Below are positions 32,733 to 39,325 of a DNA stretch of 64,000 nt, in pieces. How positions within the stretch are numbered: the stretch's first letter is position 1; the number at the start of each line of letters is the position of its first letter. The notes below the pieces were generated by a model. It was not told the DNA's origin and ran no database searches. It saw only the letters and a program-made list of their open reading frames with translations. The translations under genes and the position numbers were made by a program. The stretch is from Trichosphaerium sp. ATCC 40318 (taxonomy: Eukaryota; Protista; Tubulinea), in the NCBI GenBank assembly GCA_038496445.1, contig JALMLS010000368.1:186001-250000 (forward strand), written 5' to 3'.

Positions 32733-35700
32733 TTAAGTATTAAGTAAATCAATACGTTTTGCTCTGTGCCATACAAGTTCTCCATTCCTTTTAAAGTATC
32801 TTATACGATGTTGTGGAAACCAATGCGTATCGTCTATACCAAAGTCATCAAATGGCATTTCTTGAATACCAACAAATCTATCCATGTATCCGATTACAAA
32901 CTCTGTTGAATCTAACGAAGGATCCCATTTTATCCTTGACATAATGTGTTTTGAGTGCTTGAATACACCATCATCTTCCATGTCTTCTTCCTCCTCTGAT
33001 TCTCCATCAGATGATTTATTATTATTATTACCCTTTGCTGCCTCTGCAGCAGCCTTGGCGGCAGCCTCTGCAGCTTTTTGTTTCTTGGCATTTTTTCGTT
33101 GTAATTTCTGCTGCTTTCGGAAATCTTTTGTGTCCTGTTTTGTAACTTGCTTGATTGCTGGCGAAGATACAACTGGCGATGGTCGCGGGTTAGGCGTGTA
33201 TGTTTTAGCTTTAGGAACTTGTGCTGTTTGTTGCTTCTTAGCGATAGTACGCGCTTTTGGAGGTGAAGGACTATCCAAGCGAGCGCTTTGTTTTGAAGAT
33301 TTTTGCAAGTTGTCAAGCATGTTGGCTCTAAAACAAGCATGAGGTTGAGTATAAATAACAGTTTGTACCCTTTGGTAATATTCACTTGTATTTTAAAATT
33401 TGGTTGACTTAGAGCAGTATTGAATAGTGCTTCCACTTGAGGAATGAAAGACTTAAGAGCAACACTTTTTTGGATTGTTTTGAGAAGTCCAAATGTAAGA
33501 ATGCAAATGTTCTTCTTTCCATTCAAATGTATAGGCGCAGGATGGACTAGAAAAATTAAGTTAGATTTGAGAAGCCTTCCTGGGTAAAATAGTACCAATG
33601 AGAGGCAGTTCTGTGGATAGCAATTTAACAACATTTGGTGTGACGCTTTCGATGCTATCAATGTTGGATTGACTTATGTTATCTCCAGTCACTAAGATAG
33701 ATCTGTTAGATACTATTTGATACTTTTAAGGGTCGTACTGGATACTCTCATATATCTTGGATACATAGAAGAGAAAGGAGGTCCGTGGAATATGTTCCAA
33801 TCTCCCTTCTTGACTTGTTTAAAAGTTCGTTTGACTCGATCTGAGAATACAGCAACACTGGCTTTTGTAACGTTTTCTGCCAAGTTTATGACAGGGTGAC
33901 ATGGGGAGCCTACGAACATTGGAAATTCCTATTGATTTATTAGTAATCAAAAACGTTAGTAGCGCGGAGGCGCACTTGGTCGGTTTGATGTTCTAGATCG
34001 TTATCTTGTGACAGATTGATTTGAGATGTCCAGTCTATCGTTGAGAAGAACTCAAAAAACCTTAGAATAACCTCCCATGTCTCAACACTATGTACACAGT
34101 CAGTTAAACGCACTGGAAAATAGGACCTGTATGACTCACCCAGAGTATTGCTGGCATATTTTGGCTACCATTACACTTAAACACAGTGTTGACGGGAAGC
34201 AAGTACCGGTCATGACATACTCTAAATTTAGTCTTAGTACAAAAAAAACCTGCTCAATCTCATACCTCTTGCCCAAAGCAGTAAACATTGTACAGCTGTT
34301 TTAAACACTTGATAGTCTGGTACAGACTTTCTTATTGTCAAGGTGTACAACCAAGTGTCATAATGTCCTCTCACGGATAATGTGTTTGATGTTTGCATCA
34401 TTGCATCACATGATTCTCCAACTGTTTGTGCGTAGTACAGTCGAAAGCACATGTTGTTGAACTGTATTTCTACAAACGGGCAAAGAGTCGCTTGGTCAAC
34501 CTACAACTTTGTTAATCAAGAACCATGACTAACATGAAATATTTGTGAACCGTACGTTAACAATGGTGATGTCAGGTCGAGGTTCAAAATGTGTTGACAC
34601 AGTGTTTATAAAGGACTGTGGTGAGCACTGTCCTATGACACAAATATCGTATATTTTGGATGCAAATGAGATGTCCCCTGAAGGTTCACCAGTAAAGTTA
34701 GGTTCACCATCCCATTTCATTGCATTGATTTCGCCCATCAAGAAGTTGATGCTATCCGTAACAAGTTTTACTTCTGTAAAAACGAATTAAGAAGTTGTGT
34801 TTGAAATGGAGTTGTTGTTGAAGCAGTAAAAGCTATTGTTTATATTTCTTACCTTGAGATGTATTATCAATACCATTGGTTCTTACCAAAGCTGTAAGAT
34901 CTATACCACAAGAATGTTCTTGAGTTACGACAAGCTGTTTGGATGTTACTTTTGGTTCTCCAATGTAACTCAGTGTGCATCTGTACAAGTTTCCAATAAG
35001 ATCAATGAGCACGTGGTTTTTGCGTACCTCAGTCCATTGTGATCAGAAGCAAATGTAGTTATATTCTTCCCACTGGGTGTTGTGATAGATAAAGGATCCA
35101 TACCAATCATCTGTATGTCATCACATTGCCAATGGCTTGCCCTGTTATATGTAAGAAAAAAACAAGAACAAGTAAACTCAAGTTCGTTGAAATATACCGT
35201 AGTAGTATCCTATCGAGTCTTCCAGGTTCGCCTGTTTTAGAGTTCATCTTTGCAAGCGTATTTTTACTAGGATCAAAAGTAAAACCAGGATCTTTTGGAT
35301 GAACTGATTTCCAAGCATCTGTCAATCCACTCTTCTTTACCATGAATGTATTAAACGTATCACCATCTCTAACATTGAAATCTCCCAATATAACGGCATC
35401 AGCTATAATCAAATGATCAGAACAACAACCCAACAAACTCAAAGACGAAACCACAATACCACACGGGTATGCCATTACGTCAAGGGAAAAAACAAGTACC
35501 TGACCCATGTAGTACGCGATCATACACCAGACTTAAAGTTCTTGTACGCTTTTCATCAATCACCTGGCCAACGATTAGTACCAAATACAACACTGTAAAA
35601 TTGCTATTGCTATTGTTACGTACACGCCTTGCATCAGCGTCTTTAGTTGGGGAGTTTGATAGTAGATGAAGCACAGGCACATATAGATATCTGTTGTTGA

Positions 35701-37301
35701 TATTGAACTGTCCAATTATAGCTGATTTGTGTGTTGTGAATGTATGATACAAAACTCTAAATAGAACACTTAGTAAACACAACATTCACAGTCTAAAAAA
35801 AAACCGCAATGACGCTACCTGAAAGGAAACTTTGAGAGTATGACTTGACCGTAAGGGCAAATTGTGAAACCAGCTTCAAAGCAAGGAGTTAAAACGATAA
35901 AAACAAGGTTGCTTGTACCTTTGTCTGAGATGTAGTATCGTTGCTGTACCCATGGTTGTTTCAGCAACTCTTGTAAGAAAGAATGTGTCATCTCCACGAG
36001 GCCTATTATATCAGCATCGCTATCACGCAAAGTGTTCATCAGTCTGACACGCCTAAAAGTCACGTGATTGTAAGCATCAACCTGGAAATAGCGTATGTCT
36101 TAATACCTTTCTGGTGTATAGATTTTATCAGCATCGTATAGCTCAAAGAGTACATTGTATGATACTATTGTGAGTTTATTTAGACGCTGGCTTTTGTGTG
36201 TAGCAGTAGCATAGTCACACATGCCCCACGCATCATTGTTTTTGTGCGTGTATGAAGGCAGGACTCTGAAAAGCGTCTTATCTTGATCAGAACATCCTTT
36301 CTCGAGCCTCTTTTCTTCTGAATAAGCCTACTCTCAATGTTACCAATAACTTATTATCGTGTATACGAGTACCTTACAGACGCTACCAACGCGAGAGAAT
36401 ATAAGATTTGTTTCTGGTTTGGCAAACCCCTAAAAAAATAGTGTCAATTTTAAACGTCGTGGAGTGCACTATCATGTTGGTAACGTACACGAAGTGGAAT
36501 AGCATGACGTATTTGGAAAGGAGTATCTATCCCTCTTGAAATTATATACACGTGCGTCAACTTCCATTTTAGTGGTTTAAAAGATGTTTCTCTGAATTTA
36601 TGAAGCATCTCATTTGCGTAATCCTGAAAAAAATGTAAGTTGTTTTCTAACACTAATTCGAGCTTTTGTAGGATTTTTTTTGACTTACCTTTGCTTTTCC
36701 AAATGAAGTTACAGATAAATGGGGATTCCACTGACCTCCAGAAATTTTATCAAGGTCATCACATATCGGAAAAGTTTGAACAAGTTTATCATGTAATTTC
36801 TTTATCAATCTTCTTGACTAGCCGAGTTGTTTAAGTGAAAACTTGTCCTTCAAGTGAAAAGTGAAAAGTAATAGTTACCTGTATAGCTGGTTTATAGTAT
36901 ATAGTTGAACTCTTTTCAAAGTGGAAAATGTCAAGTGAAGGAAGGTCAATGTAGAAAGGAGCAATATTTGCCAGAGCCTAAAAACCAAGTTAGAAATACA
37001 ATTTAATTTGCGACACTAGCAAATGCTACTGACGCCTACAATCGCTTGGGTTGAGTAATATTATGACATTTGGTGGCGTTTTGAGGTTTTTAAATACATT
37101 TTTAAGTAGTTGTACCTCTTTTGCTTTTTCAGCTGCAGAATCTATGTGTACATCCTCCAGAAAGGGGTACACGAGGTTCATATGTGGCATCCATCGACAA
37201 ATACCTGATTTGTCATAAACTCTTCTTATCTTCTGTATATCCTCCCATGGGCCAGATACAGGTGGTATTATAACGATAGATGTTTGTACCGTCTTCTTCA
37301 T
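32733..37301 (-). CDS. Multidomain RNA end-processing protein: 2H phosphoesterase + EEP phosphatase/nuclease + poly(A)-polymerase-like domains (degenerate) + MJ1316/DUF504 domain
   Basis: 2H: SIVIIPP...RWMPHMNLVYPF and WNPHLSV. EEP: SYNVLF, IIGLVE, LHL, ILGDFN, GFTFDP, RLDRI, ASDHNGL. PAP-like: DICVIG, PFVEIQ, FKTAVQCLLLWARG, VMVAKICQQY, SPCHPVINLA. MJ1316: SRIKWDP...IGYMDRF.G...PQHRIRYFKRNGELVWHR. Confidence 0.88.
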
Positions 37302-37314
37302 TGTTGGTGATTGT

Positions 37315-37489
37315 AAAAATAGCCAAATATAAAAAACTGTGTTTTGAGAAAGAAGCGATAAAAAAGTGCTCCATGTTCACCGAATCGAATCATACATACC
37401 TTTAACAAGCTTAATAGAGTGTCTCACGTACTATAGAAGGTGAAAGAATAGAATTATTACTTCTGTAAGCCAGAAATTTGGCTATTTTT
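37315..37489. promoter_or_regulatory. Symmetric bidirectional promoter/5'UTR region with a 14-bp perfect inverted repeat
   Basis: AAAAATAGCCAAAT (37315-37328) and ATTTGGCTATTTTT (37476-37489). Each copy reads ATTTGGCTATTTTT(A)CAAT toward the adjacent ATG and ends 13 or 16 nt before it. Confidence 0.6.
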
Positions 37490-37505
37490 CAATAAGGAAA
37501 CACAG

Positions 37506-38788
37506 ATGGCAGCCAAGGCATCCTTTCGCTGTGAAATATGTAATTTGAGCTTCAACAAGGCCGTACAACTCAAAAAGCACGAAAAGACAATTAGTCATGA
37601 ACGAGCTATTGCTAGACAGGCAGAAATAGCCCAAACAAAGACGCAAAGCACCTCACATATAAAAGCGCTTCGCGTACACGGTGAAACATTTCAAGAAGGC
37701 ATCTATTCACTAAATAAGACAGTAAATACGCCTCAAATACGTGATACTAACACAATATAGCTCTCTGATCATAAATTTCCGAGCAATCTGAGCTTAAACG
37801 ACGCGCTTGCCTTGTACTATACGAAAACAAGGCCTAGAAGAACAGTAAAGGTACCAAGACACCTATAACGCGTTATCCGCTAAGAATCTACGTTTATAGA
37901 ATAGGCGAAAGTGTATTTGTACTTTTGTTCAAAATGTCGTTACTACTTTGTTCCAAAACTCTCGAATTCGATTGTATGGATCTATATCTCTTAATCTAGA
38001 CTCTGAAACAAGTGATATCGATGCAAGTATTCAGCTAAAAGATACCAAAGCTGATCACGTGGAAGTACTATCAACAGTTGCTTTGGGCATCTCACGTGCT
38101 TCTGCTGCAACACTATCAGTGCGCAAAGCGTTGACAGCGAAAATACCTTGTGTGACGATATTTGATGAGTTTTCGAGGTTGTCTGTTGACTTGTCTATGT
38201 GGAACGCAAACAAGAAGAAAGCACAGGACATAGTTTCTATATTTCTAGGGTAAGATTCTTCTTGAAAAAAACACGTGTTTTTGGTGTGTTGACATAACGT
38301 GTAGGTTTGATAAACGAGCGACTGTACTAGTTTGGAGTGTTAGGCAGTGGGCTAAAGCAAATCAATTGAATCATACATACCAACAAGGAACTGTTAATAG
38401 CTTTGGTTGGACCCTTTTAACAATTGGTTTTTTGCAATCTGTTGTAGTTCTTCCTCCATCTCAATCAACTTCTTCAGATTGGTCTAGTGATAATGAATCA
38501 AACCTAGGGGACTTATATATTAATTTTTTCGAGTGGCTTAGTGCTTTTGATGCAGAAACAAGTGTTGTCAGCGTCATAAGAGGTGGTGTTGTTGAAAGAG
38601 ATGGTAATTCCTTTTTGGAAAACACAACTTTCATTGTTGAGGATTTACCACCCAGACCTCCGCCACATGGGAACGTGACACGTCATGTTACAGATAGATC
38701 ATTAAAGAAAATACAGAGGATCGCAAGAGGGACTGCAAGTGCACTTAAAAAAGGCGGTAATCTCTTCGACATTTTAAAGGATGCTTGA
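37506..38788 (+). CDS. C2H2 zinc-finger Cid1/TUTase-like terminal nucleotidyltransferase
   Basis: CEICNLSF...LKKHEKTISH zinc finger; LYGSISLNLDSETSDIDASI (GS plus DxD); AKIPCV...SVDLS (third Asp); RQWAK...GTVNSFGWTLLTIGFLQ; NLGDLYINFF; FIVEDL...NVTRHV (PAP-associated domain). Confidence 0.88.
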
Positions 38789-39325
38789 AAAAAAAAAAAA
38801 TCAGTCTTGATCAAAACGCCTTGATACAAGATTAAGATGACATGCCCATTTGTAAAATACTGATTCACGAGAACTATCGCGTGTATAGACACTACTTACA
38901 GTAACAAAAGTAAAAAAAATTAGAACCCAATTGAGTTATTAAGGCAGCACTTGAAGGTAATAAAAAATAAAGGAAAAAAAAATGAACAATATCAAGATTT
39001 AAATTGTAATGTCGGTGTTTGTCATTGTACATTTTTTGAATGTCCTACTGTACATTGTTTTTTGTCTCGGTCCCAACAGACTTTTTTTTTTCCACATGTT
39101 TTTTTTTTTTTGGTTTGTTCAACAATTCGTTATCATGACCACTTCGTCTTTTTTTTTTTTGTATTATTTACAAATAGCCACAAAAATAAATCATCACCAA
39201 AAAATCACGGGAAAAAATAGTATCCATGGAGAACCACCTCGATTACAAATCGCGGTCTCTTAAGAAAGAATGTGAGCATCAAAAAAAAATCACGTGAAAA
39301 AAAGCATGAAATTTCATGGTTCTTA

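What the first reader, a model, noticed from the sequence alone, without database searches (positions are those of the whole stretch)
32733..38788. Head-to-head RNA 3'-end healing and tailing module: repair polyprotein with a dead polymerase next to an active zinc-finger TUTase-like enzyme
Seen: the left gene fuses 2H, EEP, PAP-like and MJ1316 domains. The right gene, with its ATG only 204 bp away and divergent, is a C2H2-ZnF Cid1-type NTase with intact GS, DxD and third Asp. Known: 2H enzymes open 2',3'-cyclic phosphates, EEP domains can remove terminal phosphates, MJ1316 (as in LENG9) is a predicted cyclic-end recognition domain, and Pol-beta-family NTases add tails. Similar fusions are described in fungi and other eukaryotes. 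Inference: here the tailing step has moved from the fused PAP module to the neighbouring gene, giving a co-regulated two-gene pathway (recognise, decyclise, dephosphorylate, tail) for cleaved tRNA/rRNA/U6-type ends or for defence against ribotoxins or viruses.
Basis: partly seen in the sequence, partly recalled or inferred. Interest (0 to 1): 0.8.

Follow-up and report, generated by a model that had tools for sequence, protein, structure and literature searches.

The report
Dead-polymerase RNA repair gene beside TUTase
An amoeba carries a spliced, expressed gene that joins three RNA-end repair domains to a poly(A) polymerase that has lost its catalytic residues, and this gene sits head-to-head with an intact tail-adding enzyme. 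The same genome keeps a sister copy with a working-looking polymerase, and no relative shows the same gene pairing, so a two-gene repair-and-tail pathway remains an untested idea.

Summary
The minus-strand gene (37301 to 32733; 19 exons, about 1140 aa; 10 introns seen in spliced RNA contigs) encodes 2H, EEP, a degenerate canonical PAP and MJ1316. In the PAP module, GS has become GE, DxD has become IxD, the third Asp is Arg, and the RNA-binding domain is not detectable. The EEP and MJ1316 domains keep nearly all family-conserved residues. The divergent plus-strand gene starts 204 bp away (37506-38788; about 377 aa). It is a C2H2-finger NTase of the Cid1/URT1/TUT4 type with GS, DxD and the third Asp intact.

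New here:
- The four-domain fusion is a widespread eukaryotic family found in Amoebozoa, a probably fungal clade (inferred, not looked up) and permuted forms.
- The same genome holds a sister paralog on contig C7 with an intact-looking PAP and no NTase neighbour.
- Catalytic PAP residues are also replaced in other family members.
- None of seven related loci, nor the NTase's own paralog on C14, repeats the pairing.

Both genes differ from a related strain mostly by silent changes. Best reading: a healing-only paralog that arose by duplication in this lineage and lies next to an ordinary terminal transferase. Functional coupling is possible (about 0.2) but has no comparative support. The scan flagged this same stretch before (s1-411315, s1-411402), not on other DNA.

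The parts
32733..37301 (-). Left gene, coding region from ATG to stop. The model has 19 exons and about 1140 aa, in the order 2H, EEP, degenerate PAP, low-complexity linker, MJ1316.
   Evidence: Ten introns come from spliced RNA contigs. The remaining introns were inferred from the reading frame and from the family profile. The model has no internal stop. One intron between 35403 and 35581 is unresolved.
36489..37301 (-). 2H phosphoesterase domain (exons 1-4). Motif 1 reads PHMNL (HxN) and motif 2 reads PHLSV (HxS).
   Evidence: Pfam 2_5_RNA_ligase2 at 2.4e-7 and 5.6e-4. The HxN plus Hx[ST] pattern recurs across the family.
35028..36210 (-). EEP (endonuclease/exonuclease/phosphatase) domain with catalytic N, E, H, D, N, D and D-H retained.
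   Evidence: Pfam Exo_endo_phos. The window keeps 37 of 40 family-conserved columns.
33739..34773 (-). Degenerate canonical PAP nucleotidyltransferase and central domains. The RNA-binding domain is not detectable downstream.
   Evidence: Collinear family-profile hits. Collinear tblastn hits to the genome's own canonical PAP and to the C7 paralog. Only 13 of 28 conserved columns are kept, and 0 of 8 in the RNA-binding-domain region.
34646..34690 (-). Former PAP active-site strand. GS reads GE (34690-34685). The first Asp of DxD reads Ile and the second is kept (34654-34646).
   Evidence: Alignment to the family profile, with the spacing between GS and DxD (G, then 12 and 14 residues) identical to the C7 copy.
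34441..34443 (-). Position of the third catalytic Asp of PAP, here Arg (FRLYY against the family's DLQY).
32748..32963 (-). MJ1316 domain, the predicted recognition module for 2',3'-cyclic phosphate ends.
   Evidence: Pfam 6.3e-21. It is 62% identical to the C7 copy. The window keeps 23 of 31 conserved columns.
37302..37505 (.). 204-bp spacer between the two divergent start codons. It is presumably a shared bidirectional promoter.
   Evidence: Read directly from the sequence. An RNA contig of the left gene reaches 37311.
37506..38788 (+). Right gene, with a 4-exon model of about 377 aa: a C2H2 finger followed by a Cid1/URT1/TUT-type nucleotidyltransferase.
   Evidence: Frame-consistent model. 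RNA contigs lie over 37933-38789. The first two introns are inferred only.
37524..37598 (+). C2H2 zinc finger of the zf-met / JAZ (U1-like) type.
   Evidence: Pfam zf-met 2.8e-5, zf-C2H2 1.3e-4, zf-C2H2_jaz 2.5e-4.
37900..38249 (+). Pol-beta palm exon with GS (37978-37983), DID (38014-38022) and the third Asp (38188-38190).
   Evidence: Pfam MTPAP-like_central 9.1e-13 and TUTase 7.2e-6. Alignment to TUT4/TUT7.
38305..38785 (+). PAP-associated (PAP/OAS1 substrate-binding) exon.
   Evidence: Pfam PAP_assoc 5.8e-4. URT1 2e-6, GLD2 and Cid1. Atlas clusters are all PAP_assoc.

Best explanation
The left gene is an expressed, selectively maintained paralog of a widespread eukaryotic fusion enzyme with the domain order 2H, EEP, canonical PAP, MJ1316.

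In the family's inferred reaction, MJ1316 docks on an RNA 3' end that carries a 2',3'-cyclic phosphate. The 2H domain opens the cycle to a monoester. The EEP domain removes the phosphate. The fused PAP then adds a tail.

After a duplication in this amoeba's lineage, the window copy kept end recognition and both healing steps. It lost two of the three catalytic carboxylates, the Ser of the GS motif and the recognisable RNA-binding domain of its PAP module. It therefore most likely works as a healing-only enzyme that turns a cyclic phosphate into a 3'-OH. Its PAP remnant probably serves as a structural spacer or RNA-contact surface.

The right gene is a separate, catalytically intact terminal uridylyl/adenylyl transferase of the Cid1/URT1/TUT4 family with an N-terminal RNA-binding C2H2 finger. 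The two genes share a 204-bp divergent promoter region. On present evidence this is an ordinary head-to-head neighbourhood and not a conserved functional unit.

Shown: the domains, the residue states, splicing, the paralogy, and the absence of the pairing elsewhere. Inferred: all the chemistry, and the independence of the two genes.
For: - Domains and residues.
- Splicing and an intact 1140-aa frame.
- Selection: against a related strain, the listed exon differences are 22 silent and 6 replacing in the left gene (4 of the 6 lie in the low-complexity linker), and 7 silent and 1 replacing in the right gene.
- Live paralog: the sister copy on C7 has PAP_NTPase, PAP_central and PAP_RNA-bind hits and GS, DxD and D.
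- Duplication: the window and C7 copies are sisters (94/90 support) with equal branch lengths on EEP plus MJ1316 columns, inside a clade that holds the three named amoebozoan members. On PAP columns the window copy is at most 23.5% identical to any member, against 27-34% for C7.
- Family breadth and repeated replacement of catalytic residues in other members.
- No NTase beside seven related loci, and no healing gene beside the NTase paralog.
Against: - The one copy that lost its polymerase is also the one that has a polymerase gene 204 bp away, while the live copy does not. That pattern is what the coupling model predicts.
- With roughly ten Cid1-like loci in a 70-Mb genome, having such a neighbour by chance is uncommon.
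- None of the relatives examined is an ortholog of the dead copy, so the absence of synteny is weak evidence.
- No enzymatic activity of any family member has been measured, as far as the held literature shows.
Confidence: 0.6

Rival explanations
1. One reading: the pair is a co-regulated two-gene pathway. The left protein recognises, opens and dephosphorylates cyclic-phosphate RNA ends. The neighbouring zinc-finger NTase then supplies the tailing step that the fused PAP can no longer perform.
For: - The lost and retained activities are complementary, and the arrangement is divergent with a 204-bp spacer.
- The live-PAP paralog on C7 has no NTase neighbour.
- Both genes are covered by RNA contigs of the same run.
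- A precedent exists for a separate EEP phosphatase that heals 3' ends so that an MTPAP-type NTase can tail them: ANGEL2 and MTPAP in animal mitochondria (PMC9525292).
Against: - The pairing is not repeated at any of seven related loci, including three members with a replaced catalytic PAP residue.
- The NTase paralog on C14 has no healing gene nearby.
- None of the 150 listed MJ1316 proteins shows a significant match to this NTase's palm exon or zinc-finger exon. Only its PAP-associated exon matched, weakly, the PAP central region of several family members.
- Gene order in eukaryotes seldom tracks pathway membership.
- The genome still has a complete fused enzyme.
Confidence: 0.2
2. The dead-PAP copy acts as an antagonist or modulator of the live C7 enzyme. 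It would bind and heal the same cyclic-phosphate ends without tailing them, diverting RNAs from a tail-dependent fate such as decay marking. Alternatively, its pseudo-polymerase domain could pair with an active polymerase, much as the inactive N-terminal NTase domain accompanies the active domain in TUT4/TUT7.
For: - The sister paralogs have near-equal conservation of EEP and MJ1316, and only the PAP differs.
- About half of the conserved PAP core positions are kept, and the gene is under purifying selection.
- The right gene's palm exon aligns best to the inactive N-terminal NTase domain region of TUT4.
Against: - There are no data on expression of the C7 copy.
- There is no interaction evidence.
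- The PAP region supplies only three strain differences (2 silent, 1 replacing), too few to show constraint on that module by itself.
Confidence: 0.12
3. The left gene is a decaying pseudogene, or a chimeric mis-joining of separate genes.
For: The PAP module is highly diverged, and Pfam does not detect it in the exons.
Against: - The open frame is continuous across 19 exons.
- Spliced RNA contigs include one that links 2H and EEP exons.
- The silent-to-replacing ratio is 22:6.
- The gene is collinear with full-length single-ORF homologs such as P0068 and P0020.
Confidence: 0.03

Closest known systems
Eukaryotic 2H, EEP, PAP, MJ1316 fusion proteins. These are MJ1316-linked predicted RNA-repair proteins. 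PMC6514570 states that MJ1316 shows diverse fusions to RNA-repair domains across eukaryotes and cites Burroughs & Aravind 2016, which I could not read here. Examples are Pelomyxa schiedti KAH3767389.1 (P0087) and the metagenomic P0068 and P0020.
   Same: The domain order and collinearity are the same. The 2H motif pair (HxN and Hx[ST]) is the same. The EEP catalytic set and the C-terminal MJ1316 are the same.
   Different: The PAP catalytic residues are lost (GE, IxD, R). The PAP RNA-binding domain is not detectable. The PAP region is at most 23.5% identical to any member.
The sister paralog in the same genome, G000:C7 about 167800-171900 (+).
   Same: It has the same four-domain order. It is 49% identical over EEP plus MJ1316 columns and is the sister in the tree.
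   Different: The C7 copy keeps GS, DxD, the third Asp and the PAP RNA-binding domain. Its divergent neighbour looks by eye like a CLU/eIF3_p135-type gene (not run against Pfam) and is not an NTase.
ANGEL2 (a CCR4-family EEP) acting before MTPAP in animal mitochondria.
   Same: An EEP phosphatase clears 3' phosphates so that a Pol-beta-type NTase encoded by another gene can add a tail (PMC9525292).
   Different: ANGEL2 is a stand-alone EEP without 2H, PAP or MJ1316. Sequence similarity to the EEP here is not significant (E 0.38). No gene linkage is involved.
LENG9 (CCCH finger, AKAP7-like 2H, MJ1316). This description is from my own knowledge of the family.
   Same: It combines a 2H phosphoesterase with MJ1316.
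   Different: The window gene has no CCCH finger (none was hit), and LENG9 has no EEP or PAP. The 2H here matches the 2_5_RNA_ligase2 model.
Cid1 / URT1 / GLD2 / TUT4-TUT7 / TUT1 non-canonical nucleotidyltransferases (comparison for the right gene).
   Same: The right gene has a palm with GS, DxD and D, a PAP-associated domain, and an N-terminal C2H2 finger as in TUT4/7 and TUT1.
   Different: It is short (about 377 aa) and has no RRM or CCHC knuckles. Its nucleotide preference is unknown.

Membership tests
2H, EEP, PAP, MJ1316 fusion family | N-terminal 2H phosphoesterase with two His motifs | tested here: met
   Pfam 2_5_RNA_ligase2 at 2.4e-7 and 5.6e-4. PHMNL and PHLSV match the family pattern W-x-P-H-x-N and P-H-x-[ST].
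2H, EEP, PAP, MJ1316 fusion family | EEP domain with the full catalytic set | tested here: met
   Pfam Exo_endo_phos. The window keeps 37 of 40 family-conserved columns, including N36, E69, H140, D174, N176, D229, D265 and H266 of the profile.
2H, EEP, PAP, MJ1316 fusion family | Canonical PAP nucleotidyltransferase and central domains present | tested here: met
   Pfam does not see them on the exons (PF04928 genome scan). The family profile sees them collinearly, and so does tblastn against the genome's own canonical PAP (2.4e-5, 0.008, 0.014).
2H, EEP, PAP, MJ1316 fusion family | PAP catalytic residues (GS, DxD, third Asp) | tested here: not met
   They read GE, IxD and R. Several other members also lack one or more of these residues, so this feature is not universal in the family.
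2H, EEP, PAP, MJ1316 fusion family | PAP RNA-binding domain | tested here: not met
   0 of 8 conserved columns are kept, and there is no profile hit between positions 633 and 755. The C7 copy has PAP_RNA-bind at 1.8e-5.
2H, EEP, PAP, MJ1316 fusion family | C-terminal MJ1316 domain | tested here: met
   Pfam 6.3e-21, above the cut-off.
2H, EEP, PAP, MJ1316 fusion family | All domains lie on one transcript | tested here: inconclusive
   One spliced contig links 2H to EEP, and others link the linker to the PAP and the last three exons to each other. The EEP-to-linker and mid-PAP junctions rest on the open frame and on collinearity alone.
Cid1/URT1/TUT-type non-canonical NTase (right gene) | Pol-beta palm with GS, DxD and the third Asp | tested here: met
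   MTPAP-like_central 9.1e-13. The alignment to the active domain of TUT4 places D-I-D and the third Asp.
Cid1/URT1/TUT-type non-canonical NTase (right gene) | PAP-associated domain | tested here: met
   PAP_assoc at 5.8e-4 with 20.5 bits, against a cut-off of 22.6. URT1 at 2e-6. All ten best Atlas clusters are PAP_assoc.
Cid1/URT1/TUT-type non-canonical NTase (right gene) | UTP-selecting His in the nucleotide-recognition motif | not tested
   A His precedes G-N-V-T-R in the last exon, and the C14 paralog has Tyr at that position. No alignment to Cid1 covered this stretch.
LENG9-type proteins | CCCH zinc finger with an AKAP7-like 2H and no EEP or PAP | tested here: not met
   No CCCH hit was found, and EEP and PAP are present.
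Conserved functional gene pair (healing enzyme plus NTase) | The adjacency is repeated in paralogs or relatives | tested here: not met
   No NTase lies within 6-10 kb of the C7 paralog or of the loci of P0068, P0087, P0020, P0134, P0089 and P0070. The NTase paralog on C14 has no 2H, EEP or MJ1316 gene nearby. No close relative was available.

The most novel reading that the evidence does not exclude
The catalytically dead PAP module has become a docking pseudo-enzyme that recruits the neighbouring zinc-finger TUTase. A fused heal-and-tail enzyme would then have been split by evolution into a healing subunit and an exchangeable tailing subunit with a different nucleotide specificity, for example U-tailing in place of A-tailing of cleaved RNAs. 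The live C7 paralog and the dead window paralog would send cyclic-phosphate RNA ends to two different fates.
Probability: 0.12. Interest if true: 0.75.

Novelty: new variant of a known kind. Interest (0 to 1): 0.42.

Why it matters
No member of the 2H, EEP, PAP, MJ1316 family appears to have been studied biochemically. It is the most complete predicted single-chain machine for reading, opening, dephosphorylating and tailing 2',3'-cyclic phosphate RNA ends.

This genome offers a natural experiment: two sister copies that differ essentially only in whether the polymerase is alive. Comparing them should show what the tail is for. It could mark cleaved RNAs for decay, stabilise them, or prepare them for ligation. 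The comparison should also show whether MJ1316 really recognises cyclic ends.

If the neighbouring TUTase does complement the dead copy, it would be a rare eukaryotic case of a fused pathway being resolved into a linked gene pair. If it does not, the locus is an ordinary example of subfunctionalisation after duplication.

Tried and rejected
- **Word search:** The search for homologous proteins with the MJ1316 exon found nothing because of its length bracket.
- **Solved-structure search:** the PAP-like exon gave no hit against PDB sequences. An EEP exon gave only ANGEL2 at E 0.38.
- **Pfam PAP_central genome scan:** it hit the canonical PAP and the C7 paralog but not the window.
- **Metagenome scans:** the NTase exon and the MJ1316 exon found no close relative, so synteny in near relatives could not be tested.
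- **Fusion (Rosetta-stone) test:** among the 150 best MJ1316 proteins, none shows a significant match to this NTase's palm or zinc-finger exon. Only weak hits of its PAP-associated exon to PAP central domains were seen.
- **Intron enumeration:** brute-force search with strict GTA..YAG rules failed in the PAP region. It was solved only after the family profile fixed the exon blocks, and one donor is GTGAGT.
- **Literature:** the Burroughs & Aravind 2016 paper is not held, so what I say of it rests on PMC6514570 and on memory.
- **Expression level:** RNA depth could not be used to rank expression, because only contigs were available. One right-gene contig carries 16 unmatched letters that look like a retained intron end.
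- **Pseudogene reading:** rejected (see rivals).
- **Complex prediction:** not sent, because only single exons could be given unaltered and the report does not claim binding.

Full report
**What is in the sequence**

The region has fragmented open frames typical of an intron-rich eukaryote. Earlier notes of the scan call the organism an amoeba. The assembly is 70 Mb in 642 contigs, and the window is C81:186001-250000.

On the minus strand, exon-by-exon Pfam scans give:
- 2_5_RNA_ligase2 (2H) on the first and third exons
- Exo_endo_phos on two middle exons
- MJ1316 at 6.3e-21 on the last exon

On the plus strand the scans give a C2H2 finger (zf-met 2.8e-5), MTPAP-like_central (9.1e-13) and PAP_assoc (5.8e-4). 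The two start codons are at 37301 and 37506, which leaves 204 bp between them.

**Gene models and expression**

One public run of a related strain is 90-99% identical to the window and behaves as RNA. Its contigs skip ten short segments that all read GT..AG on the minus strand. One 712-nt contig joins EEP exons to four 2H exons. Other contigs join the EEP-PAP linker to the first PAP exon and join the last three exons to each other.

I placed the remaining introns using the reading frame and a family profile. The result is a 19-exon model of 3423 nt (1140 aa) with no internal stop. One intron between 35403 and 35581 stays ambiguous.

The right gene fits a 4-exon, 377-aa model. RNA contigs cover its last two exons, but its first two introns are inferred.

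Against the related strain, the listed exon differences are 22 silent and 6 replacing in the left gene, with four of the six in the low-complexity linker. In the right gene they are 7 silent and 1 replacing. Both genes are therefore under purifying selection.

**The family**

An exhaustive search with the MJ1316 exon found 1286 proteins at E up to 0.001. Among the best 150, many are long proteins that match the window in several domains. Pfam on nine of them shows the following:
- The full order 2H, EEP, PAP_NTPase, PAP_central, PAP_RNA-bind, MJ1316 occurs in P0087 (Pelomyxa schiedti KAH3767389.1, named only 'RNA 2',3'-cyclic phosphodiesterase') and in P0020.
- P0068 has the same order without PAP_NTPase or PAP_RNA-bind hits.
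- Forms without the 2H domain occur in P0148 (Pyxidicula), P0066 (Clastostelium) and P0021. These may be truncated models.
- A PAP plus MJ1316 form occurs in P0123.
- Permuted forms occur, such as RWD, MJ1316, EEP, 2H, PAP in P0043.

Sources are listed, and the collinearity map is. PMC6514570 states that MJ1316 recognises 2',3'-cyclic ends and is fused across eukaryotes to RNA-repair domains, citing Burroughs & Aravind 2016. That paper is not held, so I could not check whether this exact architecture is drawn there. The kind is therefore known from comparative genomics. No biochemical study turned up in my searches.

**The PAP module of the window copy**

Pfam and PDB sequence searches do not see it. 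A profile built from 27 members hits five consecutive minus-strand exons at profile positions 371-404, 407-490, 499-518, 522-547 and 566-633. These are the same positions and the same order as in the C7 paralog. The best hit on the opposite strand has i-E above 4. tblastn against the genome's own canonical PAP (contig C26) gives collinear matches at 2.4e-5, 0.008 and 0.014. Homology to PAP is therefore established.

At the catalytic positions the family has G-S, then D-x-D twelve to fourteen residues later, then D in the next strand. The window has G-E, I-x-D and R.

Counts of family-conserved columns kept:

| Region | Window copy | C7 copy |
|---|---|---|
| EEP | 37 of 40 | 36 of 40 |
| MJ1316 | 23 of 31 | 20 of 31 |
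| PAP NT + central | 13 of 28 | 22 of 28 |
| PAP RNA-binding region | 0 of 8 | 7 of 8 |

The polymerase is dead and partly eroded, while the healing and recognition domains are fully kept. The 2H first motif is HxN and not HxT/S, but this pattern recurs across the family, so it is not a sign of decay.

**A sister copy with a live-looking polymerase**

Genome-wide Pfam scans found three MJ1316 loci. They also found PAP_central hits just upstream of the one on contig C7. Reading that locus shows the same four-domain order, with GS, DDIDVV and DIDLL intact. It has Pfam PAP_NTPase, PAP_central and PAP_RNA-bind hits.

On 289 EEP plus MJ1316 columns, the window and C7 copies are each other's nearest relatives (49% identity). 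They are sisters in a maximum-likelihood tree (94/90 support) with equal terminal branches (0.60 and 0.56). The pair sits inside a clade that holds the Pyxidicula, Clastostelium and Pelomyxa members together with metagenomic ones. On PAP columns the window copy is at most 23.5% identical to any member, against 27-34% for C7.

The simplest history is a duplication in this lineage followed by loss of polymerase function in one copy. Other members also have one or more catalytic residues replaced (DIN, SHVE, SNMD and the like). From their clustering I take most of these to be fungal, which I did not look up. Loss of the polymerase therefore recurs in the family.

**The neighbour**

The palm exon of the right gene aligns to TUT4/TUT7 (5.4e-6). 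The alignment places D-I-D and the third Asp opposite those of the active TUT4 domain. The last exon aligns to URT1 (2e-6), GLD2 and Cid1 and resembles only PAP_assoc clusters in the Atlas. It is a small, intact Cid1-family terminal transferase with a U1/JAZ-type finger.

The genome has about ten such loci. One is a 38%-identical paralog on C14 with its own DxD and third Asp.

**Is the pair a functional unit?**

I looked for the pairing wherever I could.
- The divergent neighbour of the C7 paralog looks by eye like a CLU/eIF3_p135-type gene.
- The neighbours of P0068 are a CRCB channel gene and small ORFs. Those of Pelomyxa P0087 are a FYVE gene and unknowns. P0020 has an RNase P/MRP p29 gene upstream.
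- Three members with a replaced catalytic PAP residue (P0134, P0089, P0070) have no NTase annotated nearby.
- tblastn with the right-gene exons finds nothing in any of these loci.
- The C14 NTase paralog has no 2H, EEP or MJ1316 gene within about 8 kb.
- Among the 150 listed MJ1316 proteins, none shows a significant match to this NTase's palm or zinc-finger exon.

The limits of this test are real. None of these loci is an ortholog of the dead copy, no close relative could be found, and contig depth cannot rank co-expression. What remains in favour of coupling is the pattern itself: the dead copy has a polymerase next door and the live copy does not. There is also a mechanistic precedent. ANGEL2, an EEP phosphatase, removes 3' phosphates so that MTPAP can polyadenylate (PMC9525292). 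I put coupling at about 0.2.

**Verdict**

Its inference is one possible reading, but the tailing step has not moved in any strict sense, because the genome keeps a complete fused enzyme.

The best-supported account is a healing-only paralog, produced by duplication and loss of the polymerase, that lies head-to-head with an ordinary terminal transferase. This is a new variant of a kind known from comparative genomics. Its interest is moderate and lies mainly in the natural live/dead pair, which makes the function of an unstudied RNA-end repair family testable.

The joined frame was used only inside local scripts, for a stop and frame check, for counting silent and replacing differences, and as profile-column rows for the tree.

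Noticed in passing
G000:C7 about 167800-171900 (+) (L016 5800-9900, L002): A sister paralog of the left gene with the order 2H, EEP, PAP, MJ1316 and an intact-looking PAP (GS, DxD, D; PAP_NTPase, PAP_central and PAP_RNA-bind hits). Its upstream divergent neighbour looks by eye like a CLU/eIF3_p135-type gene (not run against Pfam).
   Followed up: yes
G000:C52 about 165500-167250 (-) (L017 7490-9250): The third MJ1316 locus of the genome appears to be an RWD plus IMPACT (UPF0029-like) plus MJ1316 gene. It resembles the Thecamonas 'impact protein' P0003, which also ends in MJ1316. This would link a translation-control protein to cyclic-end recognition.
   Followed up: partly
L018 (Logan SRR33375165 contig, 16 kb), gene 1448-1723: The best database match to the window's MJ1316 domain (57% identity) is a stand-alone 91-aa MJ1316 protein. 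It lies on a densely packed, intron-free contig that also carries a DUF5757 giant ORF and an RNA polymerase Rpb1 fragment, which looks like a giant virus.
   Followed up: no
P0043, P0002, P0031, P0047, P0053, P0115, P0058, P0022: A circularly permuted version of the same fusion exists, with the order (RWD), MJ1316, EEP, 2H, PAP. The four modules have therefore been assembled in at least two orders.
   Followed up: partly
window 37158-37172 and 36710-36724; family members: In this 2H clade the first catalytic motif is W-x-P-H-x-N-x-x-Y-P (HxN) where the textbook 2H motif is HxT/S. The second motif is the usual P-H-x-[ST]. The pattern recurs from amoebae to the permuted forms.
   Followed up: partly
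G000:C14:293999-294851 (-) (L028, L029): A paralog of the right-hand NTase (38% identity over the last exon) with DxD and the third Asp intact. It has Tyr where the window protein has a His before the N-V-T-R motif. No RNA-healing gene lies nearby.
   Followed up: partly
window 33022 and 36852: The related strain in run X1 lacks 6 nt in the Lys/Ala/Glu-rich linker of the last exon (in frame) and 7 nt inside the intron 36818-36878. The two are 90-99% identical, so they are different strains or sibling species.
   Followed up: no
L022 11567-15661 (Pelomyxa) and L023 6761-7558: In Pelomyxa a Dis3/Rrp44 exosome nuclease gene lies about 4 kb downstream of the fusion gene. In the P0020 contig an RNase P/MRP p29 gene is the divergent upstream neighbour. 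These RNA-processing neighbours differ in every genome and are probably there by chance.
   Followed up: no
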